Positions 283 to 34,053 of a stretch of 64,000 nucleotides of DNA are shown piece after piece. The DNA is taken from positions 124,001-188,000 of IMG/VR virus record IMGVR_UViG_3300020084_000003, one strand, 5' to 3'. Below the pieces are notes generated by a model that saw only the letters and a list, made by a program, of their open reading frames with translations, was not told where the DNA came from and did no database searches. Within the stretch, counting starts at the first letter, position 1, and every line of letters begins with the position of its first letter. Made by a program: the position numbers and the translations under genes.

Positions 283-717
283 ATGGACCCATACCAAATT
301 GGTGAAGGCTACAGAGAAACCATCTTTCACAAAAAAGGTGGTTTGTTTTAACTTGAAAAAGAAATAGTGTTGTCTTGTGTAAGATGGCACATTGGAAAAA
401 TGTTTATAATAAGCATCGAAATAAATGGGTTTGTAAAAGAAAAGAACATATCTATACCTATGCCAGATGGCATGGAGCCTATTGTATTTGAGAACAAAGA
501 TTACAAAAATATCTATACACCTGAAAACTTTGTGTATGACAAGGAAGTGGTCATTAAAAATAGAAACCTTGTGAGTGGAGTGATTTTTCGATTCTCTAGA
601 AACTCCGGTTCTGAAATAATAACTGCGCCAATGATATATCAAGATTGCATTTATTATACAAGTCACAAATATATACCTTTAACAATTAATAGTATACAGG
701 AAAACGACAATGGATAG
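283..717 (+). pseudogene. Paralog-array member interrupted by an in-frame TAA at 349-351, or a shorter CDS 367-717
   Basis: ATG 283 is in frame with ORF 367-717. The full span is 144 codons, matching its siblings. A TTGACA promoter element lies at 245, and the C-terminus has 'YQDCIY'. Confidence 0.45.
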
Positions 718-1129
718 TATTGAAGAAGCTATTAAAGAAATATATAAAACGACCTCTTTGAAGTTTGAATATAATGGCATCCATTGTGCAATTCACAAGA
801 AGCTGTTTAATGCGGAACTTTATGTGAATTTGGATCAGGCCGAAGATACAGAAAAGAGAATAGGCAAATATATTGGCTTTGATTTTGAATACGATATAAA
901 CAAGCATTTTCTTCCCAATACGAACATACAAATTCAAAAGAAACCAAATTTTGGCCTTGTTTTTGTCAACGAAGTAAAGCCCATTGAAATAAACCTTACG
1001 CTTGTGAGAAAGGAAGTAGAATATAAAACGAACACGTTATATAAAGGATGTGTTTTCAAAAGATCACAATGTTTAAATCCTGCGCGGTCTATTTTTGATA
1101 ACTGTGAAGGGGTAGATGGTTTAGAATAA
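710..1129 (+). CDS. Hypothetical protein, tandem paralog array
   Basis: 139-aa ORF overlapping the upstream stop, with a 'YKGCVF...FDNCE' motif. Confidence 0.75.
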   Translation: MDSIEEAIKEIYKTTSLKFEYNGIHCAIHKKLFNAELYVNLDQAEDTEKRIGKYIGFDFEYDINKHFLPNTNIQIQKKPNFGLVFVNEVKPIEINLTLVRKEVEYKTNTLYKGCVFKRSQCLNPARSIFDNCEGVDGLE

Positions 1130-1149
1130 CAACTCAATAGGATATAGAT

Positions 1150-1587
1150 ATGGAAAACGAGGTTTCAAAACTTATAGGTCGTTTCTTGGAAATTTCAAAA
1201 AAGAAGAACGATGATTATGAAGAATATTCTACCAGTGTCAAATCAGACGTTGAACCCCAGATGGACATTGCTTTAGAATTTTGGTATGATTTTTGCGAAA
1301 TTGTCGTAACGATATATTGTCATGCGTCAGTTTATGATGCTGAAAAATTCATAGTAGAATTGCCTAGTGGTGAAACGCTGTATTACAACCATTACTCTAC
1401 AAATACGGTCAACATTAGAAACATTGACACGAACGGATATGATATTCTCTTCTTTGTTGTATTTGAAAAAGAATACGAAGAAAAACAAGCAAAAGAAAGG
1501 TTAAATATCAAATATAAAAACTGCGTTGTAAACAATTATATGCTCTCTGATAATTCAGTAGAAGGATGTGAATTTTATGAAAGGTGA
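1150..1587 (+). CDS. Hypothetical protein, tandem paralog array
   Basis: 145 aa with an AGGA RBS and a 'YKNCVV...EGCEF' motif. Confidence 0.75.
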   Translation: MENEVSKLIGRFLEISKKKNDDYEEYSTSVKSDVEPQMDIALEFWYDFCEIVVTIYCHASVYDAEKFIVELPSGETLYYNHYSTNTVNIRNIDTNGYDILFFVVFEKEYEEKQAKERLNIKYKNCVVNNYMLSDNSVEGCEFYER

Positions 1588-1978
1588 TAGTAAAAAACTG
1601 GTGGATATTTACACTAGGCAAATGCAAGGGCTTGATACATCTCCATATAGGATATTGGTTAATCAATCGAAATATTTGGACGTTTATTCTATGGGGGTCG
1701 AAGATATCACTATGGAAGAGTTTGGAATTTCCAATATAGACCATGAACAGTTTAATCTGAAAACCATAAAAGACTCATTTCAAAAACCTGAATTTCATAG
1801 CTTTGAAGTTGATAACTTGATTCTCATATACCCATTAAGATTGACATTTTTTGTGGGAACTATAGAATACCATTTGAATGTAAAACATAATAACTGCATA
1901 TTCAAATTAGGCCAGAAGAAATACTATGAAACTATTAACGAGCATAATTGTGTATGGTGTTTAGATGATGTTGGGTAA
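1577..1978 (+). CDS. Hypothetical protein, tandem paralog array
   Basis: 'HNNCIF...HNCVW' motif. The start is probably MKGDSKK. Confidence 0.7.
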   Translation: MKGDSKKLVDIYTRQMQGLDTSPYRILVNQSKYLDVYSMGVEDITMEEFGISNIDHEQFNLKTIKDSFQKPEFHSFEVDNLILIYPLRLTFFVGTIEYHLNVKHNNCIFKLGQKKYYETINEHNCVWCLDDVG

Positions 1979-2393
1979 AACTGAAAACAAGCTACTTGAA
2001 ATGTCAAAAATAAGTGGAAATGGAGTAACTATAAGCATTGATCCGTATAAAGTAAAAATCATGATTAGATATGATGAATTTTGGCAATTCGCAGATATTA
2101 TTAGCAGTATATTCGATCAGCAAATTTCCGAAGAAGATTTCGAATTCTGCAAAGTTGTATATGGTGGTGCAATTGCGCCTGATGCAAAATACTTCATAAA
2201 CTCCTCTAGTTTTGCACATTTTCAAAACATGAAATTGGAAAAGCCCATATTGATAAATGGTAGAATAAAATCCACTAATCTTTATATCATCAATATGGAT
2301 TACACCAATTGCGTATTTGAATGTGAAAAGCCAGTAACAAAAATATATAAAATTGCCAGAAGCGATAAAGACTGCATATGGAGCAAAACATGA
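1965..2393 (+). CDS. Hypothetical protein, tandem paralog array
   Basis: Shares 'FAHFxNM..KPI.I...INMDYTxCxFxC' with the next ORF. Confidence 0.75.
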   Translation: MMLGKTENKLLEMSKISGNGVTISIDPYKVKIMIRYDEFWQFADIISSIFDQQISEEDFEFCKVVYGGAIAPDAKYFINSSSFAHFQNMKLEKPILINGRIKSTNLYIINMDYTNCVFECEKPVTKIYKIARSDKDCIWSKT

Positions 2394-2794
2394 GCATTGA
2401 AGAGACAATATTGGAACATTCCAAACATTCTAGAATTTTTATATTACTCAATAGTTCAAAAAACTACGATGTGCTAGAATATAATTACAGCAATTTCGGT
2501 GAATTTCAGGCAGAGATTGAAACCCTATTCAATGTGGATATAGAGAAAGATGATTTTGAGATATACGTGGATGATCCAATTACAGATATGCAACTGTTTA
2601 GGTATAAACATCAATTCGCTCATTTCAAAAACATGCATTTTAAAAAGCCCATAGTAATACGAGCATCATATGCATATGGAGATATATACCACTATATAAA
2701 CATGGACTATACTAGTTGCATATTTGATTGCAGTGAAAAATTGGTTAATACTAGATCAAGGGTCAAAACGGATTGTATATATTTGGGTGATTAA
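2390..2794 (+). CDS. Hypothetical protein, tandem paralog array
   Basis: Clear paralog of 1965-2393, with an ATGA overlap. Confidence 0.75.
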   Translation: MSIEETILEHSKHSRIFILLNSSKNYDVLEYNYSNFGEFQAEIETLFNVDIEKDDFEIYVDDPITDMQLFRYKHQFAHFKNMHFKKPIVIRASYAYGDIYHYINMDYTSCIFDCSEKLVNTRSRVKTDCIYLGD

Positions 2795-2806
2795 AAGGGT
2801 ATTGAA

Positions 2807-3226
2807 ATGAAGAATGACATAAGCAAATTTATCGGCTATTATGTGAATATGGCTAAAAAAGGAGAATTTCTGGATGAGATTGTTGATTCAATTTCTGAAA
2901 TTAAAATAGAAGTCAATTCATATGTGGGTTCCCAACATGCTCGATATTTAGATATTGAAGTAATTACACCATACCATATAGGAAATGACCCAATTATGCT
3001 TTTACCATCGAATGAAATATTTCATTTATATCATGATTTGATCGTATTGAAAAACCTCGCATTTAACGATATCCGAATACATATAGAAACCGATACTCCA
3101 TTTCCTAAAAATACGATCAATGTAAATGACGCATATAGATATAAAATCGAAATGATTAATTGCGTTTGTCCCGATTATAAAAGGGACATATATGAATTTA
3201 AAAACTGTGAAATATTTTCATGCTAG
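2807..3226 (+). CDS. Hypothetical protein, tandem paralog array
   Basis: The N-terminus MKNDISKFIG resembles MENEVSKLIG of 1150. It has a 'INCVC...FKNCEIF' motif. Confidence 0.75.
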   Translation: MKNDISKFIGYYVNMAKKGEFLDEIVDSISEIKIEVNSYVGSQHARYLDIEVITPYHIGNDPIMLLPSNEIFHLYHDLIVLKNLAFNDIRIHIETDTPFPKNTINVNDAYRYKIEMINCVCPDYKRDIYEFKNCEIFSC

Positions 3227-4000: not shown

Positions 4001-4234
4001 ATGACCGCTCGCATCCAACTCGACACCTTCAACGGTCGCGGCTCGCAGCATCACCTGAAAAATCCGAAGACCCCGGCAGAAGAAAAAGCCCTGATCGCGG
4101 GCGGCTCTAAAGTCCGGTTTCAATCCACCCCTATCTCGAAAAAAGAAGAGGCGGAAAATTTCATCGCCGCCCGTGCGAAACTCGCCCGCAACAGCAAGGC
4201 AAAAGTCACTCTGGAAAAAGCCCCTTGGGAATAA
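4001..4234 (+). CDS. Small basic protein, VxLxxxPW-tail family (MTARIQLDTFNGRGSQHHLK...VTLEKAPWE)
   Basis: GGAGG RBS at 3991. Close paralog of 7841-8071. Confidence 0.8.
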   Translation: MTARIQLDTFNGRGSQHHLKNPKTPAEEKALIAGGSKVRFQSTPISKKEEAENFIAARAKLARNSKAKVTLEKAPWE

Positions 4235-4485
4235 GGGGAACGGGCGGGGGAAACCCCGCCTTCCTTGTTTCACGTGAAACAATCTCGCAATGAAAAAAGT
4301 TGAAAAAGGGGATTGACCAAAATCAGCAAGGCATGATATTCTGAAATAGAATCAAAAATTTTTTAGATGATTCGCATGAAGATTCTATTTCAGAATATCA
4401 CCGAATCACGATATCCGTCAAGAGGAAAAATCGTTCACGTTTTGTTCTCTATGGGGAAAAAGAAAAAGCCCCGAAGGGCTTGATC

Positions 4486-7158: not shown

Positions 7159-7412
7159 GGCGATCATCCTTTTTTGCACAGTTTTCCCTCGGAGCATCGC
7201 GCCCCGCAACACCTACGTAGCAGGGAATCACCCTGCTTGTCAAGCGTATATGCAAAGAAAAAATCGAATTATTTGGGGTTGACAGGCCGGGCGATTCTAC
7301 GATATTCTGAAATAGAGAGTCTATGCGAATCACTTGGAAGATTCGAGATTCTATTTCAGAATATCACACTCAGATTTCATGTAAAGATAAAAAAAGCCCC
7401 GAAGGGCTTAAT

Positions 7413-7586
7413 TTATGAAAACTCCCGGTCTACTATTTCCAGACGTTCCCAGACTTGCGCCCACGTGGAGTCGGCGGGAAGATCACACAGAAACATTTCC
7501 GCGTGGAACGTTGCATTGTTTGCAACGTCAATGGCTTCTTCCAGCGACAGTTCGGGGCGGGCTTGGACTTGGGCGAGGATGGACAT
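7413..7586 (-). CDS. 57-aa acidic hypothetical protein (MSILAQVQARPEL...)
   Basis: Read by hand. AAGGA RBS and a terminator at 7390-7409. Confidence 0.6.
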   Translation of the reverse strand: MSILAQVQARPELSLEEAIDVANNATFHAEMFLCDLPADSTWAQVWERLEIVDREFS

Positions 7587-8745: not shown

Positions 8746-8962
8746 GATCCGGGTTTCCTTCTGTTTCCGGGTTTCTGTATCTTGAATGTATGGGGGGCCA
8801 GATGATTCGTCAATAGGAAAAAATAGGAAAGATTCTTTTTATTTGGGGTTGACAGTGTGGGGTGGGGATAATATTCTGAAATAGAATCCAGAATCATCGT
8901 TCACGATTCGTTCTCATGGGGTTTCGCTGCGAAACTGTTTCACGTGAAACAATGACATTGCC

Positions 8963-9154
8963 CTAAAGCAATGCCATAAGTTGAAACATGATGATGATAG
9001 CAGACAAACAAATAGTAAGAAGAAACGAACAAGTCAAAGCGTTAACTGTATCTTTAGCAATCGCGCAACGGATGCTAAGGTTAAGCAAAATCAACCCCAT
9101 CATGCAAAACGTAGCAGTAGCGCAAGAAGCGATGAAAAGAAGAAAGTGTTCCAT
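8963..9154 (-). CDS. Small two-TM membrane protein
   Basis: Hydrophobic 63-aa ORF flanked by two parS sites. Confidence 0.55.
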   Translation of the reverse strand: MEHFLLFIASCATATFCMMGLILLNLSIRCAIAKDTVNALTCSFLLTICLSAIIIMFQLMALL

Positions 9155-9218: not shown

Positions 9219-9524
9219 TCAGGCTTGCACCGCTTCCGCTTGTGCAGCACGTTCGGCACGTTTCGCCGCGTTGCGTTCCATCGTGGCAACCCACGTCCGC
9301 GCACGGCCCGTCAGGGCAGGAACATGGCGCGGACGACCACGCTTGCCTTCAATCCGTTGTTCCTGAATCTCGACCAGACCAGCCTCGACCAGTTGCGCCG
9401 TCAGGTGACGCGAAGGGATGTTTTCAGCATCGCCCGCCTTGATCGCGACCAGCGCGGCAAGCTTGGCCTCTTTGCTGTTGAAGGTTGCCGGGCGACCACG
9501 GGCGGCTTTGATTTCTTTCGTCAT
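9219..9524 (-). CDS. AT-hook (RGRP) / winged-helix-like DNA-binding protein, copy 1
   Basis: Two RGRP motifs and the pattern 'PSRH...LVEAGLVE...RGRP..VPALTG'. Paralogs at 13167, 23299 and 25705. Confidence 0.75.
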   Translation of the reverse strand: MTKEIKAARGRPATFNSKEAKLAALVAIKAGDAENIPSRHLTAQLVEAGLVEIQEQRIEGKRGRPRHVPALTGRARTWVATMERNAAKRAERAAQAEAVQA

Positions 9525-12975: not shown

Positions 12976-13166
12976 TTTGTTCTCCTGTTTCTGATGATTC
13001 TGTTATGCCATATCCATTCCGAGTCGTCAACATTTTTCTTTCTATTGACAGGTTGCGGGGTTGTGTGATATTCTCGCCCGCCCTGCCCCTGCCCGATTCG
13101 CATTGGAATGTTTCACGTGAAACAAAAGCAAGAGGGGCAAGGTTTCCCCTGCCCCTCTCTCTTGTC

Positions 13167-13457
13167 TTAGGCTTCCGCCTTGGCAGCGCGACGGGCCGCG
13201 TTGCGTTCCATAGTCGCAAGCCACGAACGGGCTTTGCCGGTCAGGGCAGGGACATGAGCGGGACGGCCACGCTTGCCAGTAGGTTCCGCCGTTTTCATCT
13301 CGACCCGGCCCATCTCGACCAGTTTCAGCAGCAGATGGCGCGAGGGGATGTTCTCAGCATCGCCCGTATGGATGGCGCGGAGTGCAGCCACGATGGCGTC
13401 ACGGTTGGCGAAAGTAGCGGGACGGCCACGGGCGGCTTTGGTTTCGGTGTTGGTCAT
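13167..13457 (-). CDS. AT-hook (RGRP) / winged-helix-like protein, copy 2
   Basis: Close paralog of 9219-9524. Confidence 0.75.
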   Translation of the reverse strand: MTNTETKAARGRPATFANRDAIVAALRAIHTGDAENIPSRHLLLKLVEMGRVEMKTAEPTGKRGRPAHVPALTGKARSWLATMERNAARRAAKAEA

Positions 13458-13753
13458 GAGGTAGTTCCTTTCTCGTTTGTGGGCGTCTTGCCCGTTTCCA
13501 TGAACTATAGATGCCACATGGATTCGATTCGTGCAAGAGGAAAAATGACTTCCAAGCGAAAAAAGTTGTAAGCCGTTGAAAGTAAACGGAAACTTTCTTT
13601 TCTTTATGAGAATCACCCCATGCGCGGGCGCGAGAGAATATCACAAGGAACGGGCATGGGTCAAGGGTAAAAATGATTTGGTGCAATTGAACTTTGGGGT
13701 TGTGCTTGCGTTGGGGATGTGTCAGAACTGACAGGACGCAACAACAGAAGGAA

Positions 13754-13972
13754 ATGAGATTGCATCCCACCTATTACGCTTTAGGTATCGTGACGGATGC
13801 GCGAGGACTTCAACGGATGGCAACTTTTCTTAATCTAACCAAATGCGGCAACACTTTTGCAAATGGTAACAGGATGCTACAATATGATAAAGAAAACAAT
13901 CTTTTGCTCTTGAACTCGACAAAAGATGATGCCTTGAGACTCAGCGCACGATTCAACTTTGAGTTTGAATGA
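13754..13972 (+). CDS. Hypothetical protein, paralog of 6338-6571
   Basis: Sequence similarity. Followed by a terminator and a parS site. Confidence 0.75.
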   Translation: MRLHPTYYALGIVTDARGLQRMATFLNLTKCGNTFANGNRMLQYDKENNLLLLNSTKDDALRLSARFNFEFE

Positions 13973-14173
13973 AAGAAAGAAAGAGGCAGGGGAAACCCTG
14001 CCTCTTTTGTTTCACGTGAAACAGTTTCGCAGCGAAACCACCGAATCACTTTTCACGTGAACGCGGGAGAATATCAAATAAATAACTATAGGTCAACAGG
14101 AAAGATTGAGTTGACAAACCGTTCTGGTTGTGCGAGTATTGGAATCAGAACTCAAACATGAAAGGAATCGAAA

Positions 14174-14377
14174 ATGATTGTTATCGTGGAACATATGGAT
14201 AAACAAAATCCTGATGGGCGCTATATGAAAGACGTTATCACCAATGCAAAAGCAGCGGAATCGTTCCTCGGGCAAGTCAATATGTCCAACAAAAACAAGG
14301 GCAAGGGCGAGGCTCAGGCGGGTGACGTGATCGGAAACTTGCGTATCGTGAAAATTTCCGAGAAAAATAAAGCTTGA
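14174..14377 (+). CDS. Small hypothetical protein
   Basis: TTGACA promoter and AAAGGA RBS. Confidence 0.65.
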   Translation: MIVIVEHMDKQNPDGRYMKDVITNAKAAESFLGQVNMSNKNKGKGEAQAGDVIGNLRIVKISEKNKA

Positions 14378-14430
14378 CGCGAATCAGGGATTAGGGCATG
14401 ATGGAATCACATCAACAAAGGAAACCAGCC

Positions 14431-14616
14431 ATGTTCTTGTCCCTGACCAAAATCCGTGAAGATGCAATGAAAATCATCAAGGAAAACAACATCACTTGCC
14501 CGGCAGAGGTTTACTTTGCCGTCATCAACGCGACTAACGGTGACGTGATTCAAAAGCGCGTCAACAAGGTAGTTGATAGCATCTGCCGCGAATTGAACAT
14601 CCCGCAAGAGTGGTAA
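14431..14616 (+). CDS. Small hypothetical protein
   Basis: Own promoter and AAGGA RBS. Confidence 0.65.
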   Translation: MFLSLTKIREDAMKIIKENNITCPAEVYFAVINATNGDVIQKRVNKVVDSICRELNIPQEW

Positions 14617-14958
14617 GACACCATCGCACAAGACCTCAGAAGCCCGCCTAGTGCGGGTTTCTTGCTTTTGTGGGTCTACCTACCAGAGCAGCATAACGCG
14701 GCTCACAGGGCAATTTTTAGGGGGTTGACACTACGGGCAGAGGTATGATATTCTCCGCGACTTTTTCCAATAGTGATTCGTATTTCGCTTTTCTTTCAAT
14801 ATAGATTAATGCGTCACAATATCTTTTTGAATATTTAATGTAAGCATCACATTCTTTAATTAAACGAATTAATTCTAATTCATCCATTTAATTCTCCTTT
14901 TCTCTCCTGATCTATTTATGAGAAAAGGAAAAGGGGCATTTCTGCCCCTTCCTGTTTC

Positions 14959-18805: not shown

Positions 18806-19751
18806 GGTTCTCGTTCCTTTCGGTTGTGTTTTGTTTCTCTGTGATTCTGTTATGCCATGAATGAAGATGATTCGCAAGCACTTTTTCAAAAATCTTTTTC
18901 CTTGACTTGATCTTGTGTTGTGTGATATTCTCTGCGAATTTTTCGAATCAAAAAAAGAGGGGGATTTCTCCCCCTTAGTTATTCGTTTACTTGCATTGCA
19001 ATTGCCCAGACACTTGCGCCTTCTTCAATGCTCATATCATGACGCTGACAAACTGCGGCAAGATTTGTTCCATCCGGTTGAATTTTCACAATTTCTTCCT
19101 TGATTTTCTCATACATGACTGCTTTGCCCATTATTCCCGTTCCCCTTCATCGTCAACCCGAACGTCCAGAAGTTGATTCCGATTGTCGCGGGCTGCAAGG
19201 CGTTGTTCGCGCCGTTGCTGGCGAACGCCATTGCGATCACGTTTCCGATCACGCGGGGTGAATTCTTCGTCGTCTTTTTCAAACCATTTCGCCATTTTGT
19301 TTCTCCTATGTCTGGCGCTTCGTTGTGATTCTGTTATAGCTGATTCGGTTCAGGTTGTCAAGAATAAGTTTTTTTCACCCATTCATCAAAATTGGTATCG
19401 AAACCCTCGAAAATACATTCCGAATTGACATAATTTTCAATCGTCCCATCATGAAACGAAACCGTGTAAATGGGTTCCAAATTGTCACCACCAACATCTT
19501 CCATCCGCATCCCCACTATATGGAAAGGTTTTCCGTTGTGGTTGGTGCAAGTATCTGCATAGAAAAGCTTTCTCAAATTAAGATTCGGCGTTCCCACGTC
19601 ATTCTCCTTTTGCTGTTGTGATTCCTTTATGCCATACCCATTCCGATTCGTCAATCAATTTCTTTCTATTGACACGATACAGTATGGTGTGATATTCTCT
19701 GCCGCCCAGACGAATCACAAAGAGTGTGACATTTCTGCCACACCCTTGTTT

Positions 19752-19985: not shown

Positions 19986-20105
19986 GAGAGGTTCCTTTCT
20001 CTTTTCCTGATTCCTTTATGCCATACCCATTCCGATTCGTCAAGAACAATTTTCATCTTGACACTATCGGTGTTGATATGATATTCTCTGCCGCTTTTGC
20101 GAATC

Positions 20106-20784
20106 AAAAAAAGTGGGGCAACCGTTCCAAACAGTTGCCCCGTTACGTCATATTATTAGCCCCTGACGCGGGGGATGCACAATGGTCGTCTGACCATTGC
20201 AAAACCTGTTTCATTTCAACAGGCTTGGCAATGGTGGCATATATTAGCCTATATGCCAGAGGCTTATTCACCTACCCAGATGTTGCCATTTATTTACACA
20301 AATAGCTCGCTGTTTTGACCTAATAGGATTTACGTTACAGCGCGGGATTTTCCCTTCAGGCCCGACGCAGCGGATTTTCCTGTAACTACCTACTAGAGCA
20401 GGATTTAGACTGCCGTGACAATCCCTTTTCTGTTATCGCGTCCCCTCTCTTCTATACGGGAAACGGCACGGAGTTTAATGGACTGACAGCACCCTGTCTG
20501 TATGATCCATTTTATTTTTCTATACTTTCTTTTTTTACATAAATTGGCCGCGCGTCCCGGCCTGCGCGAATGGAATTACATGGCTTTTCCTTCCCTGCTA
20601 TCCTGTCCATCTTTTTTTATCGGCTGGACATTTACCGCAATGATTAAACTTTCTCTATATGTATTTTTACACTCATAAATTAAGGTTAACTATTGGGGCG
20701 GATCACGCATGTTTCAATTCTCCCTAGTTGCATCTAGTTAACGCCATTTAGGTTCAGAGCCATCGGGTTCTTCCCGATCCCTAT
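20106..20784 (-). ncRNA. Putative large (~680 nt) structured non-coding RNA
   Basis: Promoter TTGACA (20814-20819)-17-TAGATT (20791-20796) and a terminator hairpin with U7 at 20106-20141. There is no minus-strand ORF of 60 aa or more. Many nested stems have G-U wobbles only on the minus strand. Confidence 0.7.
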
Positions 20785-20827
20785 GCAAAAAATCTACCAT
20801 GTGATTCTCTGCATGTCAACACCTATT

Positions 20828-21082
20828 TCAAAGTGTTGTAATTAGCCGCCCGAAGGAATTGCACCCTCCTATTCTTCCCCAAAAAGAACCTAACACGTTT
20901 GGGGCATGTTAGTTCGTCCACTAGGAAAGCGGCTTATTGCAACACTTTTTTTAAAGAGACAGGCTAGTTCAGCAAGTCCAAAGGTAACTATCTTAGGCGA
21001 TAATGTTTTTGACCTTTGTGGGTATGACTTCCTAAGTGAGCCACTTTTTTACCCTGTCTTGCTTCCCTTCCTGTCTCTCTAT
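20828..21082 (-). ncRNA. Putative ~250-nt two-domain ncRNA (long irregular hairpin plus a tRNA-like domain)
   Basis: Cassette promoter at 21089-21117 with no ORF. Closing stems are 20955-20963/21070-21078 and 20830-20849/20929-20948. T-arm-like GAGGG-TGCAATT-CCTTC at 20852-20868. Confidence 0.6.
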
Positions 21083-21572
21083 GCATTCTTTATGCCATGC
21101 TGCATTGCGATTCGCAACAGGAAAATGCACATCGGCAAAACTTTTTAGGGGTTGACTCATATAGGGTTGGTGTGATATTCTCCCGCACACGATTCGGGAT
21201 AGAAGAAAACCTGTGACATTTCTGCCACAGGTTTTTGTTGGTTTATTCTGTCAGTCTGCGTGAGCAACTTCCAGATTGGAATCCACGATCAAGAAAACGC
21301 TGCAATCGGGATTTTCTTCATCGAATTGGTCCCAAGCCTTTTCATAGCTTTCCGCCTCGACTTCTTCATAGCGGCGCTCTTCTTCTTCATTGAAGTATCC
21401 GAAAAGAAACTTTTGCATGTTCACTCCTTTGCTTGTGTGATTCTCTTATGCCATATCATGAGATGATTCGCAAGTGAAAAGATACTCTTGACATTATTTC
21501 TTATGGATGATATTCTTCCGCGCACGATTCGGGATAGAAGAAAACCTGTGACATTTCTGCCACAGGTCTATT

Positions 21573-21815
21573 TCAGATTGCGATTGCTTTTGCAAGATGT
21601 TTGATGTAGTCCACCACATCACCATTGAGAAAATCAATCTTGACAAGCATTGATTTCAGATGCCGTTGTTCTTCACTGTTGGTCATTTTCATGGCGTCTA
21701 GAATCATCCCAATAAGAATATAATTGACTCCACTTGGACCTTCGACTTCTATAATTTCGTCCGTCTGGATTCCTTTTTCTTCAATGAAAGTGTCCAGCCA
21801 TTTGTTGAAGGTCAT
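21573..21815 (-). CDS. Hypothetical phage protein
   Basis: AGGAG RBS and cassette promoter. Confidence 0.7.
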   Translation of the reverse strand: MTFNKWLDTFIEEKGIQTDEIIEVEGPSGVNYILIGMILDAMKMTNSEEQRHLKSMLVKIDFLNGDVVDYIKHLAKAIAI

Positions 21816-23298: not shown

Positions 23299-23706
23299 TT
23301 ATTCTTCGGGGTTGGACGAAACGTCAGCGAAATCTTCCGATTCGGCTTCGGCAGCGGCAGCAGCTTGCGCGGCCTTTTCCTCTGCCTTGGCGCGGTTGCG
23401 TTCGATCAGCTTGACCCACGAATTGCCCTTGCCAGTCAGCGACGGGACCAGAGCGGGACGGCCACGGCCACGGGTTTCGCCTTCCGCCAGCGTGGCAGCT
23501 TCCAGCTTGACCATGCCCTCTTCAACCAGTTGCTTGACGATGAAGCGCGACGGCATCTTGTCAGCGTTGCTATCGCGGATTGCGACCAGAAGATCAAACT
23601 TGCTGTCGCGATCAGCCAGCGTGGGCTTGCGGCCATTGTTGGCGCGACCATCGGTTTTGACTTCGGCTTGAGCGGCGACTTCGTTGGTTTCAACTTGAGC
23701 GTTCAT
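23299..23706 (-). CDS. AT-hook / winged-helix-like protein, copy 3
   Basis: PSRF..KQLVEEGMV...RGRGRP..VPSLTGKG. GC-rich codon usage. Confidence 0.75.
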   Translation of the reverse strand: MNAQVETNEVAAQAEVKTDGRANNGRKPTLADRDSKFDLLVAIRDSNADKMPSRFIVKQLVEEGMVKLEAATLAEGETRGRGRPALVPSLTGKGNSWVKLIERNRAKAEEKAAQAAAAAEAESEDFADVSSNPEE

Positions 23707-24635
23707 GATGTAGTTCCTTTCTTTCTGGGTTGCGGCGTCATTGCCTGTCTCTTTCGATGATTAAGATATAGACGATGATTCTGATTCGCACAAGAGGAAA
23801 AATGCAGATCAGCAAACTTTTTTTCGAATCGGTCCAGATGAAAAGCGCGGGAGAATATCACTGGATAGATTCATTGTCAACAGCTATTTTTGTTTCACGT
23901 GGAACAATGTCAAACAAAAAAGGTGTGACATTTCAGCCACACCTTCCAGTAGTTATAATCTGATATGTTTTTCTTTCAAAAATTACTTCAATCCCGCATT
24001 GCTGCACCGCCAATAGTTTTAAAGAAAGAAAAGTTAGAAGTATCCCTAGAAAAATAGTTTTTGCCCAAAAATTCATTTTGCATTTTGTCCCTTTCAAATG
24101 AAGAAAAATAACACCCATAAAAAATAACCTGAAATAATTACTGTTACTATCCCCACAATAACAGCAATTAATCCCATATAAAATGTTAAAGTGTGAAATC
24201 TAACACCCATGAAATAAATGCCACCAAATATCAAATATAGTGACAAAACAAATGCCACCCCTATTAGAATAAAATAAAAGATGGCAAATGTTTCTATCAT
24301 TTCATATTCTTTCCACAGAAGTTATTTCTAACCCATGATTCGTCAGTATGTTATACACCATTCTCTCACAGGTTGCAACCTCTTTCCATAGAAAGCGCCA
24401 CTCTTGAAGATGCTTCACACGAAGCACATCCTCAACAGCAACGTCTAGATCACGTGGGTTGTTCTTGCTATAACAACAGAAAACATTCATCTTTGGTTCC
24501 CTTTCATAGCTGATGATTCCATTCTAATCTATTTAGAATCAGAAGTCAACTCTTGACAATGAAAGTGGTTAATGATATTCTCTCAAACTGATTCGCCATA
24601 GAAGAAAGGTGTGACATTTCTGCCACACCCCATTT

Positions 24636-25046
24636 TCAGCTAAGAAATTCCCTCTTGACATAATTTTCCAGTTTCCAGTTCCCCTGAATCTGTTCAATGT
24701 CAGGGAAATTGCTATCCCTTGGACGGTGCGGGTCGTCTTTCCCGATTTGAATGACGACACTATAATCACCTTCAACCCCACCATATGCCTTGTAAGCGTC
24801 AATCAAAAGGCTAGTGGTCAAGGTTTCGTCGTCGGCATAGCCGCAACAATCAAGTGCGGATTTGCGTGTCTTAGGGTTGAAATAGACCGTGCCGACCTCG
24901 ATCAGAAAAATATTATCGGGTCCGCCCATTTCCGATTCCGATACAACATCGACAATATCAGCATAATCATCATCCGGGTTGTTCATGCGCCAGAAATAGC
25001 CGCCATTTTCCAGATTCATATCACCGTTGTAATTCCATTTCGCCAT
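24636..25046 (-). CDS. Acidic hypothetical protein
   Basis: AGGAG RBS and cassette promoter. Confidence 0.7.
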   Translation of the reverse strand: MAKWNYNGDMNLENGGYFWRMNNPDDDYADIVDVVSESEMGGPDNIFLIEVGTVYFNPKTRKSALDCCGYADDETLTTSLLIDAYKAYGGVEGDYSVVIQIGKDDPHRPRDSNFPDIEQIQGNWKLENYVKREFLS

Positions 25047-25315
25047 TGTGATTCTCCTATCTGGCGTTGCTGTTGATTCTTTATGCCACATCTCAAACCG
25101 ATTCGCAAGGACTTTTTTAGAAAACTTTTCGCTTGACACATACAGGGTGGGTGTGATATTCTCCGAGACCGATTCGCAATATTGAAATAGGGTGTGACAT
25201 TTCTGCCACACCCCATTGTTTCATTTATCCAAAACCCATTTTCCGTTGACTTTTGTATACCATTTTCCTTTGGTATATTTTTTCGTTGTATTTGTCAGTT
25301 CGCAATGATAAATCA

Positions 25316-25606
25316 TCAGAATTGGACTCCGAACTCGATTTCGATTGCTTGCTCAATGGAGCGTTTCAGGTTGTAGGATTGGAAAGCCCATCCTGCACCA
25401 TAGCGTTTCCCGCGATACTTGTTGCAATAGGCCGGGCGATACCACTTGCCATCCTTGCCCGTGAACATGAATACGGGGATGTAATAGCGCGGGTTGCCGT
25501 TCACGTCACTGTCAAGGCGGATTGCCGAGTCAACGATTCCTTTCACCATTTCGCGGTGTTCTTCGGTGGCGGTAACTTCACGTTGAACTTGAGCGGCGGT
25601 GTTCAT
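25316..25606 (-). CDS. Hypothetical protein (DVNGNPRY...YRGKRYGAGW.FQSYN)
   Basis: AGGAG RBS and cassette promoter. Confidence 0.7.
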   Translation of the reverse strand: MNTAAQVQREVTATEEHREMVKGIVDSAIRLDSDVNGNPRYYIPVFMFTGKDGKWYRPAYCNKYRGKRYGAGWAFQSYNLKRSIEQAIEIEFGVQF

Positions 25607-25704
25607 CTGGTTTCTCCTTTGCTGGTGTGATTCCTTTATGCCATAGTGAAAACGATTCGTCAATAGCAAAAAAGAAAAAGGTGGCTGTTACGCCACCTTC
25701 TCAT

Positions 25705-25911
25705 TCACCCATTATCCGAAACGAATTGCTGGCCCTTGGGCGTCAGGACGATTTCAGCCAGACCCATTTCGATCAGCTTTTGCTGATAATAGGCAGTTTC
25801 GCCGTTGATTTTTTTCAGCGAATTGGCGATAGCAGCTTTGTCGCTGTTGCCCTTGCCCCATTTCGACGGACGGCCACGGCCACGTTTCACTTCTTCGGTC
25901 ATTGTCTTCAT
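25705..25911 (-). CDS. AT-hook / winged-helix-like protein, short copy 4
   Basis: KRGRGRP...KLIEMGLAE..LTPKG. Confidence 0.65.
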   Translation of the reverse strand: MKTMTEEVKRGRGRPSKWGKGNSDKAAIANSLKKINGETAYYQQKLIEMGLAEIVLTPKGQQFVSDNG

Positions 25912-26848
25912 CCTTTCTTGGTTGCTCTCTATGTTCTTGTTATCGCATGTCCAGAATGATTCGTCAACAGCTTTCTTCTACTAGGACAGAAAAAGTTTCA
26001 CCGATTCGTGAGGGCGCGGGAGAATATCAGATTGACAATGATGTGTCAACAAAAAAAGTGTGGCATTTCTGCCACACTTGCCTGTTCCTCAATGATTTAT
26101 TTGCTAGTATCCCATTTGCTTATTTTTATCGGATTGCCAAGAGTCACCGGCATTGGGATGCCCTCGGTTATCCTCTTGCTCTTGCTGCCTTGTATCACTA
26201 TCATTGAAGTTTTCGTTCATTCGATCTAGAGAACCAATTTTCTGGTCTTCTCTTTTATTTTTATTATCCATTTCATACCTCATGTTTGTTACTACTATCA
26301 TAACAATAATATAACTCATGAGGCACTAAATGGTTCCCTAGTCTATAGAGTAAATTGTCGAATATTGCAAAGCAAGAGGAATATATTTTTCAGGATAACC
26401 CTTTTCCTTTAGAAGATTGATATAATCTTGCTCGGTATAGTCTGATTTGATCTTTACGGGAAACCCATAAGCCCAACCACTAGGCGGATCAATTAGAACA
26501 TATTTCACCCTACCAGACCCACCGCTTGCAGTTGGTTTTCAATATCTTCCATTGTGAAAGCAATGTCTGCAATCACAAAGTCAGTCCCGTGACGGGTGAT
26601 TAGACCCATATCAACAAGGAAATCTTTCTGCTCATCTGTGAGGCTAATTTCTTCCCCATCTTCTTTCAGCATATACATGACTATCTCCTTTCGGTTTCAT
26701 TACATCCCTTACTGATAAGTCCCTTATAGCCGATTCTCTTCTCTGATGCAAGAGAAACTTTCTGTTGACTCCTACAACCTTCCATGATATTCTATGGTCG
26801 TTTTCGAATCAGAAAGAAAGGTGTGGCAGAAATGCCACACCTATTTCT

Positions 26849-27448
26849 TTAGATATAGTCAATCCTTCCATTTTCGTTGAAAGTCCATTCATTAATCTCT
26901 GCCAATTCTTTGAAGGATTCTTCGCTGGTTTGATCCTCATAATCATTTTGCAGTTGTTTGTAAAGCCATGCCGACAAGTCTTTCAATACTTGGCGGAATA
27001 CATCTTCTGCATCGCAGCCCGCATCAAGCCAACCATGATTGCGGCGTTCATCTTCCATATCAACGGAATAACCGTGATAATCGGAATAGGTGAATTTTGC
27101 AGAAAGCGAATAGAAGCATTTGCGCTGCATTGCGGAAAGTTCCTTTGCAATGCGATGCAGTTCTTCATCTTGCGGCGCATATTCTTTGATCTTTTTCACC
27201 ATTTCTTTGCGGAAATAGTAATAGCCAGAAAATGCCGCATAGCTTCCCTGATGATAGAAACCGGAGAATTGAACATCTTTCGACTTTACTTTAAAGCCGA
27301 GAATTTCGCAGATTTGCAGGAAGTCATCATATACACCATCCCACCAGTCATGATTGCAGGCATAGCGCGAGATAGCTTCTTGTTTGGCAGTGTCCGAAAG
27401 TTCCGAGAAGTCATAGACAGTCTTTTCAACCAGTGCAGTGATAGCCAT
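26849..27448 (-). CDS. Acidic phage/plasmid protein (TVYxFxELSDxAKxxA...DWWDxVYDDF family)
   Basis: The N-terminal motif resembles a family often labelled 'antitoxin of toxin-antitoxin stability system'. Its function is unproven. Confidence 0.6.
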   Translation of the reverse strand: MAITALVEKTVYDFSELSDTAKQEAISRYACNHDWWDGVYDDFLQICEILGFKVKSKDVQFSGFYHQGSYAAFSGYYYFRKEMVKKIKEYAPQDEELHRIAKELSAMQRKCFYSLSAKFTYSDYHGYSVDMEDERRNHGWLDAGCDAEDVFRQVLKDLSAWLYKQLQNDYEDQTSEESFKELAEINEWTFNENGRIDYI

Positions 27449-32892: not shown

Positions 32893-34053
32893 TTACTTAA
32901 CAAAACCCTCCATCCATGCTTGCAGTTCCTCTTGACGAGAATCTTGATTCAGAAATTTGCGAAGATGATTGTTAAATACCTCCGTCAAATCCTTGTTGTC
33001 AAATCGTGCAAAAGCAAACTGACGCATAACTGAATCCTTGTCACCATTTACCGCATAATCTTTCTTTGAAGAATACTTGGTAACTGCTTCATAGGTGTAT
33101 GCATCAACTGCATGAAACGCAGCATACTTTAGTTTGAAAAATTCTTTCTCCGTTTCGTCAACAATAGCTTTGTCAGCATCATTGAGAAGCGGAATGAAAT
33201 CATCCAGTGTCCCATCCAGAATCATTTCCCAGATATGACGTTTCTTGGTGACAGCATCCTTTGCACGATGTTTGGTCACATAATCTTCTGCCTTTACTTT
33301 ATAGTATTCATTACCAAAAGTAATGACAGCGCCCTCTGTCCCTTTCAGAACACGAATTGTTTCCAAAAACTCATCCATGTTGTGCGGGGATTGAAGAAGC
33401 GGAACACGGTCATGGTCATGCAGCCAATTGTTATTATTATGAATGTTCAGATATTCACCAGTATGATTATCTCGCAATGCAAGCAAAATCAAACGTGGTT
33501 TTTCATAAAAAACCACATGAGGATTGTTCGGGCCGACATATTCAAAAATGGGAGTATGACCCAATTCCAAATGAAATCGCACCTGATCGTATCTTTTAGA
33601 ATTATCATCGTAAAAATCTTTTCCGAAAACGTCAGGAAAATCCTTGCGAAGATTGTTGATAGTATCAGACTCACCCTTGCGAGTGGCCCAACGAATTTCT
33701 CCGTTTAGTGTTTGTTCAATCATGAAAGGACGAACCATAGAACCATCCTCTTTCACCATGATCTTATGGTCACGGCTCATGTCAATCACATTCGCCTGAG
33801 TTTCCTCTAGCTGATTGACATTGAAAAATTTGTGAAAAGGACGAGACACGATACGGCCCTCTTTGTCGAAGAGTAGCCCACGGCACTCACGACGCATTTC
33901 CCAACCTGCATGTTTTTTTGAAAAAGTCTCACCAGTATCCACAACATAGTCGATCCAAGTGTAGTCACCTTTATCAGCGACAATGATTTCATCGAACCCT
34001 TTGATATGGGGCAGAACATCGTCAATGGTATGGATGGTCGGAAACTGATACAT
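32893..34053 (-). CDS. rnlA: T4 Rnl1-family RNA ligase
   Basis: 'RECRGLLFD', 'SRPFHKFFN', motif I 'KEDGS', 'FEYVGPNN', 'EGAV', 'YKVK'. Confidence 0.9.
   Translation of the reverse strand: MYQFPTIHTIDDVLPHIKGFDEIIVADKGDYTWIDYVVDTGETFSKKHAGWEMRRECRGLLFDKEGRIVSRPFHKFFNVNQLEETQANVIDMSRDHKIMVKEDGSMVRPFMIEQTLNGEIRWATRKGESDTINNLRKDFPDVFGKDFYDDNSKRYDQVRFHLELGHTPIFEYVGPNNPHVVFYEKPRLILLALRDNHTGEYLNIHNNNNWLHDHDRVPLLQSPHNMDEFLETIRVLKGTEGAVITFGNEYYKVKAEDYVTKHRAKDAVTKKRHIWEMILDGTLDDFIPLLNDADKAIVDETEKEFFKLKYAAFHAVDAYTYEAVTKYSSKKDYAVNGDKDSVMRQFAFARFDNKDLTEVFNNHLRKFLNQDSRQEELQAWMEGFVK

What the first reader, a model, noticed from the sequence alone, without database searches (positions are those of the whole stretch)
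20828..21117. Second ncRNA: long irregular hairpin plus a tRNA-mimic domain with a probable pseudoknot
Seen on the minus strand behind a standard cassette promoter, with no ORF. Domain 1 (21078-20955) is a rod of AGAGACAGG/CCTGTCTCT, AGCAAG/CTTGCT, AGGGTAA/TTACCTT and CTTAGG/CCTAAG with internal loops, loosely reminiscent of 6S RNA. Domain 2 (20948-20830) has a ~20-bp closing stem ending in a 7-bp acceptor-like helix GCCGCTT/GGGCGGC, next to a T-arm GAGGG-TGCAATT-CCTTC. It also has a D-loop-like TAGTGGA and a hairpin whose CCCCAAA loop can pair with the following TTTGGGG. There is no CCA end and no anticodon arm. Inference: a tRNA mimic (decoy for anticodon nucleases, or Y-RNA-like) and/or an RNA polymerase-binding RNA, working alongside the adjacent large RNA.
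Basis: partly seen in the sequence, partly recalled or inferred. Interest (0 to 1): 0.72.

Follow-up and report, generated by a model that had tools for sequence, protein, structure and literature searches.

The report
Orphan phage RNA with tRNA-like domain
A lake-water jumbo phage carries, behind one of its standard small-gene promoters, a protein-free stretch predicted to fold into a very stable two-part RNA whose second part nearly passes as a tRNA. No relative and no transcript data could be found, so it remains a good candidate rather than a proven new RNA gene.

Summary
The observation largely holds. Window 21121-20828 (minus strand) has a true copy of the cassette promoter and no ribosome-binding-site-led ORF. 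The predicted 257-nt RNA is unusually stable (-94.3 kcal/mol, z = -6.3) and folds better on the minus strand. ARAGORN calls it tRNA-Trp(CCA) at 95% of its default threshold, where shuffled genomes give 0.23 false calls per genome. The CCCCAAA loop and UUUGGGG complement is rare by chance (3 of 1000 shuffles).

Some details fail. Domain 1 is predicted as a Y-shaped three-way junction, not a 6S-like rod. No Rfam family matches at any threshold tried, including tRNA, YrlA, 6S, tmRNA, GOLLD and ROOL. The phage has no Ro60/Rsr gene. The element lacks U33, the UUC T-loop and a CCA end.

It has no terminator of its own, so it probably reads into the adjacent roughly 680-nt structured RNA (z = -7.9).

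It lies in a 28-kb array of shuffling promoter-terminator cassettes in a 285-kb phage. That phage also encodes about 35 tRNAs, a CCA-adding enzyme and an Rnl1-like ligase.

No homologue or paralogue was found, so covariation is untestable, and no RNA-seq run was listed.

Best reading: a real, orphan structured ncRNA with a tRNA-shaped module. Its function as a processing signal or decoy is inferred only.

The parts
21080..21121 (-). Cassette-type promoter of the ORF-free unit. The -35 is TTGCGA (21117-21112), the spacer is 17 nt, and the extended -10 is TGG-CATAAA (21097-21089). The predicted start is near 21084-21081.
   Evidence: The matrix built from 26 cassette promoters scores it 19.3 bits; shuffled windows reach at most 10.3 bits. 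The sequence was read.
20953..21080 (-). Domain 1. An 11-bp basal stem (21080-21070 with 20963-20953) and a 6-bp AGCAAG/CUUGCU helix lead to a predicted three-way junction with two hairpins.
Evidence: MFE -45.6 kcal/mol, z = -4.6.
20830..20948 (-). Domain 2. A 9+3-bp extension helix (20948-20936 with 20842-20830) closes a four-way junction.
   Evidence: MFE -46.8 kcal/mol, z = -4.8. Pair probabilities are listed.
20844..20933 (-). tRNA-shaped core. It has an acceptor-like 7-bp helix (GCCGCUU at 20933-20927 with GGGCGGC at 20851-20845), a D-like loop UAGUGGA (20923-20917), an anticodon-like arm (20912-20890), a long variable-arm-like hairpin (20889-20871), and a T-arm-like GAGGG-UGCAAUU-CCUUC (20868-20852).
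   Evidence: ARAGORN at 95% threshold calls c[20844,20930] tRNA-Trp(cca), 87 nt. The false-positive rate is 0.225 per shuffled genome. The tRNA covariance model gives no match.
20898..20904 (-). The 7-nt loop CCCCAAA. It is anticodon-loop-like (CCA at positions 34-36, C at 33) and perfectly complementary to 20883-20877.
   Evidence: 3 of 1000 shuffles show such a complement.
20877..20883 (-). UUUGGGG, the candidate pseudoknot partner of the loop. It overlaps the weak hairpin 3 and the U-rich tract after hairpin 2.
   Evidence: The duplex is -9.3 kcal/mol, against -5.1 kcal/mol contributed by hairpin 3. Hairpin 2 plus the U-tract is listed as terminator-like.
20791..20819 (-). Second, sigma-70-type promoter (TTGACA, 17 nt, TG-n-TAGATT), placed immediately after domain 2. 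It is the predicted driver of the adjacent large RNA.
   Evidence: 10 of 12 matches, with TG.
20110..20784 (-). Adjacent ORF-free RNA of about 675 nt, ending in a strong intrinsic terminator (20141-20115). This is the first terminator downstream of the nc2 promoter.
   Evidence: MFE -222.9 kcal/mol, z = -7.9. The plus strand gives -194.9 kcal/mol, z = -6.3. The terminator is listed. There is no Rfam match.
21152..21181 (+). Divergent promoter-like element (TTGACT, N17-18, TGATATTCT). It is part of the repeated intergenic module and points into the bidirectional terminator of the upstream cassette (21197-21231).
   Evidence: (family D5).

Best explanation
Shown by computation: the stretch is the payload of one cassette in a jumbo-phage array of promoter-terminator cassettes. 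Instead of a small protein it specifies a structured RNA.

Inferred from promoter geometry: transcription starts near 21082 from a cassette promoter. The first 130 nt fold into a Y-shaped domain. The next 120 nt fold into a long closing helix that carries a tRNA-shaped four-way junction. That junction has:
- a 7-bp acceptor-like helix stacked on a 5-bp T-arm with a T-loop-type UGCAA;
- a GG-containing D-like loop;
- an anticodon-like arm whose loop, CCCCAAA, resembles the UUCCAAA of the phage's own tRNA-Trp;
- a long variable arm.

The anticodon-like loop can instead pair with the adjacent UUUGGGG, which would mask it.

Inferred mechanism: the unit has no strong terminator, so RNA polymerase probably continues into the next unit, the 675-nt structured RNA. 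I infer that the tRNA-shaped module is recognised by tRNA-processing enzymes: RNase P at about 20934/20933 and a 3' endonuclease after 20844. RNase III on the roughly 20-bp closing helix is an alternative. Cleavage would release a domain 1 RNA of about 150 nt and a tRNA-like RNA of about 90 nt, and would separate both from the large RNA. The released tRNA mimic cannot decode. It most plausibly acts as a decoy or binding partner for a tRNA-recognising protein, either a host defence nuclease or a phage tRNA-repair enzyme.

My confidence differs by step:
- about 0.65-0.7 that this is a real structured RNA;
- about 0.4 that the tRNA shape is functional;
- about 0.15 that it is specifically a nuclease decoy.
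For: - Promoter membership: 19.3 bits, against at most 10.3 in shuffled windows.
- It is the only large gap on the minus strand free of ORFs on both strands in the array.
- Fold: z = -6.3, with 0 of 200 shuffles as stable. The background of the cassette region is mean z -1.26, sd 2.0.
- The minus strand is 17 kcal/mol more stable than the plus strand, with many G.U pairs.
- The predicted 5' end falls 2-5 nt before the base of the domain 1 helix.
- ARAGORN at 95% threshold calls exactly domain 2 as tRNA-Trp(cca). Only three extra calls appear in 285 kb, and the other two are backed by the tRNA model. Shuffled genomes give 0.225 calls each.
- The loop complement is found in 3 of 1000 shuffles.
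- There is no good terminator before 20141-20115.
- The phage invests in tRNA biology: about 35 tRNAs, a class II CCA-adding enzyme and an Rnl1-like RNA ligase.
- Phage large RNAs with linked tRNAs have a precedent in GOLLD (paper 10.1101/2024.12.08.627333).
Against: - No homologue was found in IMG/VR, JGI metagenomes, GTDB genomes, GenBank phages or contigs of related phages, and there is no paralogue in the genome. No covariation test is therefore possible.
- No RNA-seq run was listed.
- The tRNA covariance model gives no hit, even on 321 nt alone.
- It has C33, G55 and no CCA, whereas five inspected real tRNAs of this phage all encode CCA.
- ARAGORN's acceptor register, with one mismatch, differs from the thermodynamically best register.
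- ARAGORN at 95% has a genome-wide false-positive chance of about 0.2.
- The promoter is the weakest of the 26.
- All processing and decoy steps are inference.
Confidence: 0.4

Rival explanations
1. nc2 is not a separate gene. It is the 5' extension of one non-coding transcript of about 970 nt that includes the adjacent large RNA. The tRNA-like appearance is coincidental, and the two domains are simply further helices of a large ornate RNA.
For: - No terminator lies between 21084 and 20141 other than a weak hairpin with a U-tract.
- Both units are ORF-free and highly structured on the same strand.
- Both predicted 5' ends begin with GCAUAG.
- The tRNA covariance model does not recognise domain 2.
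Against: - A canonical TTGACA-17-TAGATT promoter with TG sits exactly between the two units, which implies separate expression of the large RNA.
- Each nc2 domain closes on itself with helices of probability about 1.0, so nc2 folds independently.
- No special complementarity exists between nc2 and the large RNA: the duplex energy equals the shuffle mean.
- The ARAGORN near-threshold call and the loop complement are both improbable by chance.
Confidence: 0.25
2. It is an evolutionary relic or by-product. A cassette lost its ORF, or recombination between cassette repeats created inverted repeats. It may be transcribed but has no function, and the structure is accidental.
For: - It is an orphan, with no homologue and no paralogue.
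- Cassettes are gained, lost and reordered between strains and relatives.
- The 5' end keeps an SD-like purine tract (GGAAGGGAA) like the cassette leaders, but with no start codon at the right distance.
- Its promoter has the weakest score.
Against: - The stability is extreme, with z = -6.3 against a regional mean of -1.26.
- It is built from at least seven different helices rather than one inverted repeat.
- It shows strand asymmetry through G.U pairs.
- A decayed ORF would not be expected to give a near-threshold cloverleaf.
- The sequence is identical in independent lake samples, including a 62.6-kb and a 4.7-kb contig, although these are the same population.
Confidence: 0.2
3. The locus is protein-coding or a type I toxin-antitoxin-like pair. 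The plus-strand 80-aa ORF (20906-21148), which JGI's gene caller predicted, would be real, and the minus-strand RNA would be its antisense regulator.
For: - A gene was called there on the identical JGI contig (L125 2838-3080).
- The peptide has a hydrophobic C-terminal half.
- A plus-strand promoter-like site at 20058-20087 could read through.
Against: - No Shine-Dalgarno sequence lies at a usable distance, and no promoter is nearby.
- The ORF runs through the minus-strand promoter.
- It has no PHROG match.
- The C/U-rich antisense of a purine-rich RNA gives Leu/Phe/Pro-rich pseudo-hydrophobic ORFs by composition.
- The plus strand folds worse.
Confidence: 0.05
4. It is a 6S-like RNA polymerase-binding RNA or a Y-RNA (YrlA)-like Ro60 partner.
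For: - It has a long closing helix with a tRNA-like apical module, which resembles the YrlA architecture in outline (established knowledge of YrlA; my comparison is by eye).
- Domain 1 is an irregular hairpin.
Against: - The YrlA, 6S and Y_RNA models give no hit, even with E up to 10 on 321 nt.
- The 285-kb phage has no TROVE/Rsr gene.
- The 6S-like rod is disfavoured by 6.2 kcal/mol, with pair probabilities of 0.02 or less.
Confidence: 0.05

Closest known systems
tRNA (Rfam RF00005), specifically class II-like tRNA with anticodon CCA
   Same: - A four-way junction with a 7-bp acceptor-like helix contiguous with a 5-bp T-stem.
- A G-C closing pair and a 7-nt T-loop with U..CAA.
- A GG-containing D-like loop.
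- A 7-nt anticodon-like loop, CCCCAAA, against UUCCAAA in the phage's own tRNA-Trp.
- ARAGORN calls it at 95% threshold.
   Different: - No hit to the tRNA covariance model.
- C33 instead of U33, G55 instead of U55, and no CCA.
- An 8-bp anticodon-like stem and a long variable arm, which is atypical for Trp.
- The acceptor is extended by 12 more base pairs.
- It is expressed from a cassette promoter, whereas the real tRNAs sit directly behind coding genes.
- It has no sequence similarity to the phage's tRNAs above shuffle level.
GOLLD and ROOL large phage RNAs, often next to or linked with tRNAs
   Same: - Phage-borne, from a lake environment, and ORF-free.
- A very large, highly structured RNA (675 nt, z = -7.9) sits directly beside a tRNA-shaped element.
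- The literature describes tRNAs in the GOLLD linker region (10.1101/2024.12.08.627333).
   Different: - Neither the Rfam GOLLD nor the ROOL model matches anywhere in the 285-kb genome.
- The locus lies in an early-type cassette array, not in the tRNA island.
YrlA / bacterial Y RNA
   Same: The 5' and 3' ends pair in a long helix that carries an apical tRNA-like module with T-arm and D-loop mimics.
   Different: - No YrlA model match.
- No Ro60/Rsr gene in the phage.
- No recognisable Ro-binding helix was identified.
- It has an extra anticodon-like arm and variable arm.
tRNA-like processing modules such as mascRNA at the MALAT1 3' end, and the T4 stable RNAs co-processed with tRNAs (from my own knowledge, not tested here)
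   Same: A tRNA-shaped element without an encoded CCA sits at the 3' side of a non-coding RNA that lacks its own terminator. It could give RNase P- or RNase Z-defined ends.
   Different: No processing data exist. Those examples are eukaryotic, or lie in a T4 tRNA operon. There is no sequence relationship.
PeSL (promoter-early stem-loop) cassettes of T4-like phages
   Same: - The context is an array of small units, each bounded by a composite terminator-plus-promoter repeat.
- Whole cassettes are lost or reordered between strains.
- The concept is described in PMC2839356 and PMC4122927.
   Different: - The repeat sequences differ, and the phage is a 285-kb jumbo phage.
- An extra divergent TGATATTCT promoter-like element is present.
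- The payload here is RNA rather than a small ORF.

Membership tests
tRNA (RF00005) | Score at or above the family's gathering threshold (29 bits) with the tRNA covariance model | tested here: not met
   There is no hit at G000:144828-145117 with E up to 10 in the genome-wide search, which found 44 other matches. There is also no tRNA hit when only 321 nt were searched.
tRNA (RF00005) | Cloverleaf accepted by a tRNA gene finder | tested here: inconclusive
   ARAGORN at default gives none in the window. At 95% threshold it calls tRNA-Trp(cca) at c[20844,20930]. The false-positive rate is 0 at default and 0.225 per shuffled genome at 95%.
tRNA (RF00005) | Conserved U33, the T54-Psi55-C56 (UUC) T-loop, and a 3' CCA that is encoded or addable at a free end | tested here: not met
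   The sequence shows C33, U-G-C in the T-loop, and UAAUUAC after the acceptor helix. Five real tRNAs of the phage all encode CCA.
YrlA / Y RNA | Match to the YrlA covariance model (gathering 69 bits) | tested here: not met
   The only weak hits (23.5 bits or less) lie at true tRNA loci, and none is at nc2. None appears in the 321-nt scan.
YrlA / Y RNA | A Ro60/Rsr (TROVE) protein encoded with it | tested here: not met
   PF05731 has 0 matches in the 285-kb phage, while the control genomes respond. The host genome is unknown and was not testable.
6S RNA | Match to the 6S models, and a long rod with a central bubble | tested here: not met
   No Rfam match was found. The rod helices have P of 0.02 or less, and the rod is 6.2 kcal/mol worse than the three-way junction.
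tmRNA | A tRNA-like domain with CCA plus a tag reading frame, detected by ARAGORN -m or the Rfam tmRNA models | tested here: not met
   ARAGORN tmRNA search finds none. Rfam finds none.
GOLLD / ROOL | Match to the Rfam covariance models | tested here: not met
   No match was found in the window or in the rest of the genome.
PeSL-type mobile regulatory cassette (context, not the RNA itself) | Repeated composite terminator-plus-promoter motifs that flank small units, with indels or reordering at the repeats | tested here: met
   - 26 promoter copies.
- At least 15 copies of the terminator hairpin (family D3).
- A strain lacks exactly 21187-21523, with 45 nt shared at the joint.
- Cassette order differs in a relative.

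The most novel reading that the evidence does not exclude
A new class of phage RNA locus. It would comprise a non-decoding tRNA-Trp mimic with a self-masked anticodon loop, released by tRNA-processing enzymes, and co-expressed with a previously undescribed 675-nt ornate RNA. The pairing would be functionally analogous to GOLLD with its linked tRNAs but unrelated in sequence. It would be used early in infection, either as a decoy against tRNA-targeting host defences or as a handle that loads tRNA-binding factors onto the large RNA.
Probability: 0.12. Interest if true: 0.85.

Novelty: new variant of a known kind. Interest (0 to 1): 0.5.

Why it matters
Phage-encoded structured RNAs are few, and their functions are mostly unknown. 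GOLLD and ROOL are known to form cages and to sit beside tRNAs, but their purpose is not known.

If this locus is real, it would be a second, independent example of a large ornate RNA paired with a tRNA-shaped element. Here it lies in an early, fast-shuffling accessory-gene array, which is where anti-defence functions are usually found.

The phage also carries about 35 tRNAs, a CCA-adding enzyme and an Rnl1-type ligase, the toolkit associated with surviving tRNA-cleaving defences. A tRNA mimic that cannot decode would therefore be directly testable as an RNA decoy.

The locus also shows that PeSL-like cassettes can carry RNA payloads as well as small ORFs.

Tried and rejected
**Searches for homologues (all negative)**
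- blastn (distant mode) against GenBank phages.
- blastn-short and nhmmer against the phage's own genome.
- IMG/VR pattern scans: two terminator motifs gave only chance single hits. The gapped D-loop/T-loop pattern and a large-RNA 22-mer gave none.
- JGI metagenome scan with the gapped pattern gave three chance hits in 58-60% GC coding DNA.
- GTDB genomes scanned with a T-arm/acceptor 21-mer.
- Neighbour-protein routes gave contigs L125-L128 and L149-L161. The queries were the 123-aa, 77-aa and 80-aa proteins and the 55-aa protein. Some of these contigs share the cassette repeats, but none holds nc2 or the large RNA by nhmmer or by the single-sequence covariance model R1.
- A paralogue-family alignment led only to a distant 318-kb phage with no match.
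- The 77-aa family alignment found nothing in IMG/VR.

**Transcription**
- No RNA run was listed.
- DNA runs show nc2 only in identical form.

**Other tests**
- Intermolecular pairing of nc2 with the large RNA is no better than shuffles.
- Antisense matches of nc2 to the cassette translation-initiation regions are no better than shuffles.
- Substitutions in the large RNA of a groundwater relative were not compensatory in the MFE model. This is inconclusive because depth is low and the MFE of 678 nt is unreliable.
- Complex prediction of the phage CCA-adding enzyme with the tRNA-like RNA was not folded by the tool, so it gives no evidence either way.
- A second ARAGORN sub-threshold call, at 7181-7262 and at 90% threshold, overlaps a promoter and leader and was judged to be chance.
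- The other 1.26-kb gap on the minus strand (13458-14716) holds plus-strand cassettes, not RNA genes.
Full report
**Where the window comes from.** The window is bases 124001-188000 of a single 284,776-bp virus record, estimated 100% complete. DNA runs that hold the region are lake-water metagenomes, with fainter signals in groundwater and other aquatic samples. The genome uses the standard code. It has a higher-GC (about 46% against 37%), long-ORF-poor block at roughly 130-150 kb (window profile).

**The cassette array.** Window 3.3-32 kb is an array of about 60 short units, nearly all on the minus strand.
- Each unit has a 42-nt promoter motif (TTGACGAATCG, 8 nt, ATGGCATAAAGGAATCAC). There are 26 copies in the window, 25 of them on the minus strand.
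- Each has a short purine-rich leader with a Shine-Dalgarno sequence and a 30-200-aa ORF.
- Each ends in a nearly invariant terminator hairpin built on GTGTGGCAGAAATGTCACAC, with at least 15 copies.
- A second promoter-like element (TTGACA, N17-18, TGATATTCT) sits back-to-back with most cassette promoters.
- One natural strain lacks exactly one cassette (21187-21523), with 45 nt shared at the joint.
- Relatives found through cassette proteins carry the same repeats with different cassette content and order.

This is the behaviour described for PeSL cassettes of T4-like phages (PMC2839356 and PMC4122927).

**Check of the observation.**
- The promoter of the finding (21121-21080) is a genuine, if weakest, member of the promoter family. 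It scores 19.3 bits, and shuffled windows reach at most 10.3.
- Between 21250 and 19986 there is no SD-led ORF on the minus strand. This is the only gap of its size in the array not explained by plus-strand cassettes.
- Plus-strand ORFs in the gap, including the 80-aa ORF that JGI called, lack a ribosome-binding site and have no PHROG match.
- The 257-nt RNA from the predicted start folds to -94.3 kcal/mol, z = -6.3, with no shuffle as stable. Each domain alone gives z of about -4.7.
- A scan of the cassette region with 250-nt windows gives a mean z of -1.26, sd 2.0.
- The complementary strand folds 17 kcal/mol worse. This is expected if the G.U pairs seen matter, so the minus strand is the likely RNA.
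- The two inner 'rod' helices of domain 1 are not recovered. They have P of 0.02 or less, and a Y-shaped junction is favoured by 6.2 kcal/mol.

**The tRNA likeness.**
- At default settings ARAGORN finds nothing in the window.
- At 95% of its threshold it calls exactly domain 2 (c[20844,20930]) as an 87-nt tRNA-Trp(cca) with a long variable arm.
- Genome-wide, this relaxed threshold adds only three calls. The other two lie in the tRNA island and are backed by the tRNA covariance model. One of them is the phage's real tRNA-Trp, at 51 bits.
- Forty block-shuffled genomes gave 0 calls at default, 9 at 95% (0.225 per genome) and 93 at 90%.
- The cloverleaf is therefore unlikely to be chance at this particular ORF-free, promoter-driven site. 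Genome-wide significance is only about 0.2.
- Against membership: the Infernal tRNA model gives no hit, even when only 321 nt are searched. The loop has C33, the T-loop reads UGC rather than UUC, and there is no CCA, whereas the inspected real tRNAs all encode CCA.
- ARAGORN's acceptor register contains a mismatch and differs from the best thermodynamic register, which continues into a further 12 bp of helix.
- Sequence similarity to the phage's own tRNAs is at shuffle level.
- Conclusion: it is tRNA-shaped but is not a tRNA gene.

**The pseudoknot.** The 7-nt loop CCCCAAA (20904-20898) is perfectly complementary to UUUGGGG (20883-20877).
- Only 3 of 1000 shuffles of the domain produce any hairpin-loop 7-mer with a perfect complement elsewhere.
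- The duplex (-9.3 kcal/mol) outweighs the weak hairpin 3 that it would displace (-5.1 kcal/mol, P about 0.4).
- All seven loop bases cannot be helical at once, for steric reasons (established pseudoknot geometry; inference). Five or six pairs are more realistic.
- The same hairpin followed by GUUCUUUUU also scores as a weak terminator, so a partial stop there cannot be excluded.

**Known families.**
- Rfam 15 gives no match at gathering thresholds in the window or elsewhere in the genome, apart from tRNAs.
- At permissive E-values it gives only noise.
- The YrlA model does not hit the element, and the phage has no TROVE/Rsr gene.
- 6S, tmRNA, T-box, GOLLD and ROOL are likewise absent.

**Surroundings.**
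- Directly after domain 2 comes a canonical TTGACA-17-TAGATT promoter (20819-20791). An ORF-free RNA of about 675 nt follows, ending at a strong terminator (20141-20115). Its MFE is -222.9 kcal/mol with z = -7.9, again better on the minus strand.
- Because nc2 lacks a strong terminator, transcripts from its promoter should run into this RNA.
- Elsewhere the phage encodes about 35 tRNAs, a class II CCA-adding enzyme with an HD domain and an Rnl1-type RNA ligase at window 32893-34053.
- Phage large RNAs associated or covalently linked with tRNAs are known for GOLLD and ROOL.

**Homologues.**
- Every available route failed to find a relative of nc2 or of the large RNA outside the same population. 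The routes are listed under 'tried and rejected'.
- Identical copies occur in at least two JGI assemblies and several lake runs.
- A groundwater run holds pieces of the large RNA at about 96-98% identity, but nothing usable over nc2.
- No RNA run was listed.

**Interpretation.**
- Most likely (about 0.65-0.7): this is a real structured RNA made from a cassette promoter.
- Plausible but unproven (about 0.4): its 3' domain works through its tRNA shape.
- The mechanism I favour is inference. The tRNA-shaped module substitutes for the missing terminator by recruiting tRNA-end-processing enzymes, or RNase III acts on the roughly 20-bp closing helix. Either route would yield a domain 1 RNA of about 150 nt and a tRNA mimic of about 90 nt with a maskable CCA 'anticodon'. 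That mimic would then bind a tRNA-recognising protein.
- A decoy role against tRNA-cleaving defences fits the phage's tRNA-repair toolkit and the accessory-gene context. It has no direct support (about 0.15).
- The rivals are a single 1-kb RNA with the neighbour (0.25), a functionless relic of cassette turnover (0.2), plus-strand coding (0.05), and 6S-like or Y-RNA-like (0.05).

**Verdict.** This is a genuine and unusual candidate, not explained by any curated family. It rests on single-sequence evidence only, so interest is moderate. Its value would rise sharply with one transcriptome or a handful of divergent homologues.

Noticed in passing
window 3300-32000 (both strands): A 28-kb array of about 60 small cassettes with 26 copies of a 42-nt promoter motif and at least 15 copies of one terminator hairpin. 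GC is 46% against 37% for the rest of the phage. One strain lacks exactly cassette 21187-21523, and relatives have a different cassette order. This is PeSL-like modular shuffling in a jumbo phage.
   Followed up: partly
window, e.g. 21152-21181, 20058-20087, 19669-19698, 13045-13074 (+); also L149:2170-2200, L155:1700-1730: At least 15 copies of a strong promoter-like element (TTGACA, N17-18, TGATATTCT). Most are antisense to the cassettes and point straight into the bidirectional terminator, so they would make RNAs of only about 50 nt. In relatives L149, L155 and L156 the same element is in sense orientation and is followed by a conserved ORF-free stretch of about 150 nt, which may be another small RNA.
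   Followed up: partly
window 20110-20784 (-): The adjacent ORF-free RNA of about 675 nt has its own sigma-70-type promoter and a strong terminator. It gives z = -7.9 and has no Rfam match. It contains an SD-AUG-UAA start-stop motif near 20588-20570. A groundwater relative is about 96-98% identical over the pieces recovered.
   Followed up: partly
G000:C1:13411-15378 (outside the window; L162:412-2379): A SIR2-family protein (246 aa) lies immediately upstream of a class II CCA-adding enzyme (405 aa; PolyA_pol head, RNA-binding and HD domains).
   Followed up: partly
window 32893-34053 (-) and 45628-46740 (-): A T4 Rnl1-type RNA ligase (PF09511, E = 2e-25) and an ATP-dependent DNA ligase. The RNA ligase, the CCA enzyme and about 35 tRNAs together suggest a tRNA-repair toolkit.
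   Followed up: no
G000:C1:253852-282660 and 23442-26921: The tRNA islands. tRNAs are spaced 0.1-2 kb apart, directly behind coding genes, and all inspected ones encode CCA. One tRNA (281863-281981) has a 25-nt intron by ARAGORN's call. A weak SeC-like call lies at 269885-269951 (24.5 bits with the tRNA model). The real tRNA-Trp (258767-258840) is missed by ARAGORN at default.
   Followed up: partly
window 9219-9524, 13167-13457, 23299-23706, 25705-25902 (-): A family of four paralogous small proteins with RGRP (AT-hook-like) motifs is scattered through the cassette array. The only IMG/VR relative found is in a distant 318-kb phage contig.
   Followed up: partly
window 21573-21815 (-): The 80-aa cassette protein belongs to phrog_6004. 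It has more than 50 homologues (41-68% identity), and the three homologue-bearing contigs fetched are otherwise unrelated phage contigs of 43-64% GC. It is a widely travelling small early gene of unknown function.
   Followed up: partly
window 710-3226 (+): Six consecutive ORFs of similar size (136-145 aa) lie on the plus strand in a 32-36% GC block. They may be a tandem paralogue family.
   Followed up: no
window 7175-7549, 24050-24299, 8800-9049, 4175-4424 (-): Other 250-nt windows in the array show very negative fold z-scores, from -5.9 to -6.9, although with only 15 shuffles each. Some lie in short ORF-free gaps, so there may be further structured RNAs or leaders.
   Followed up: no
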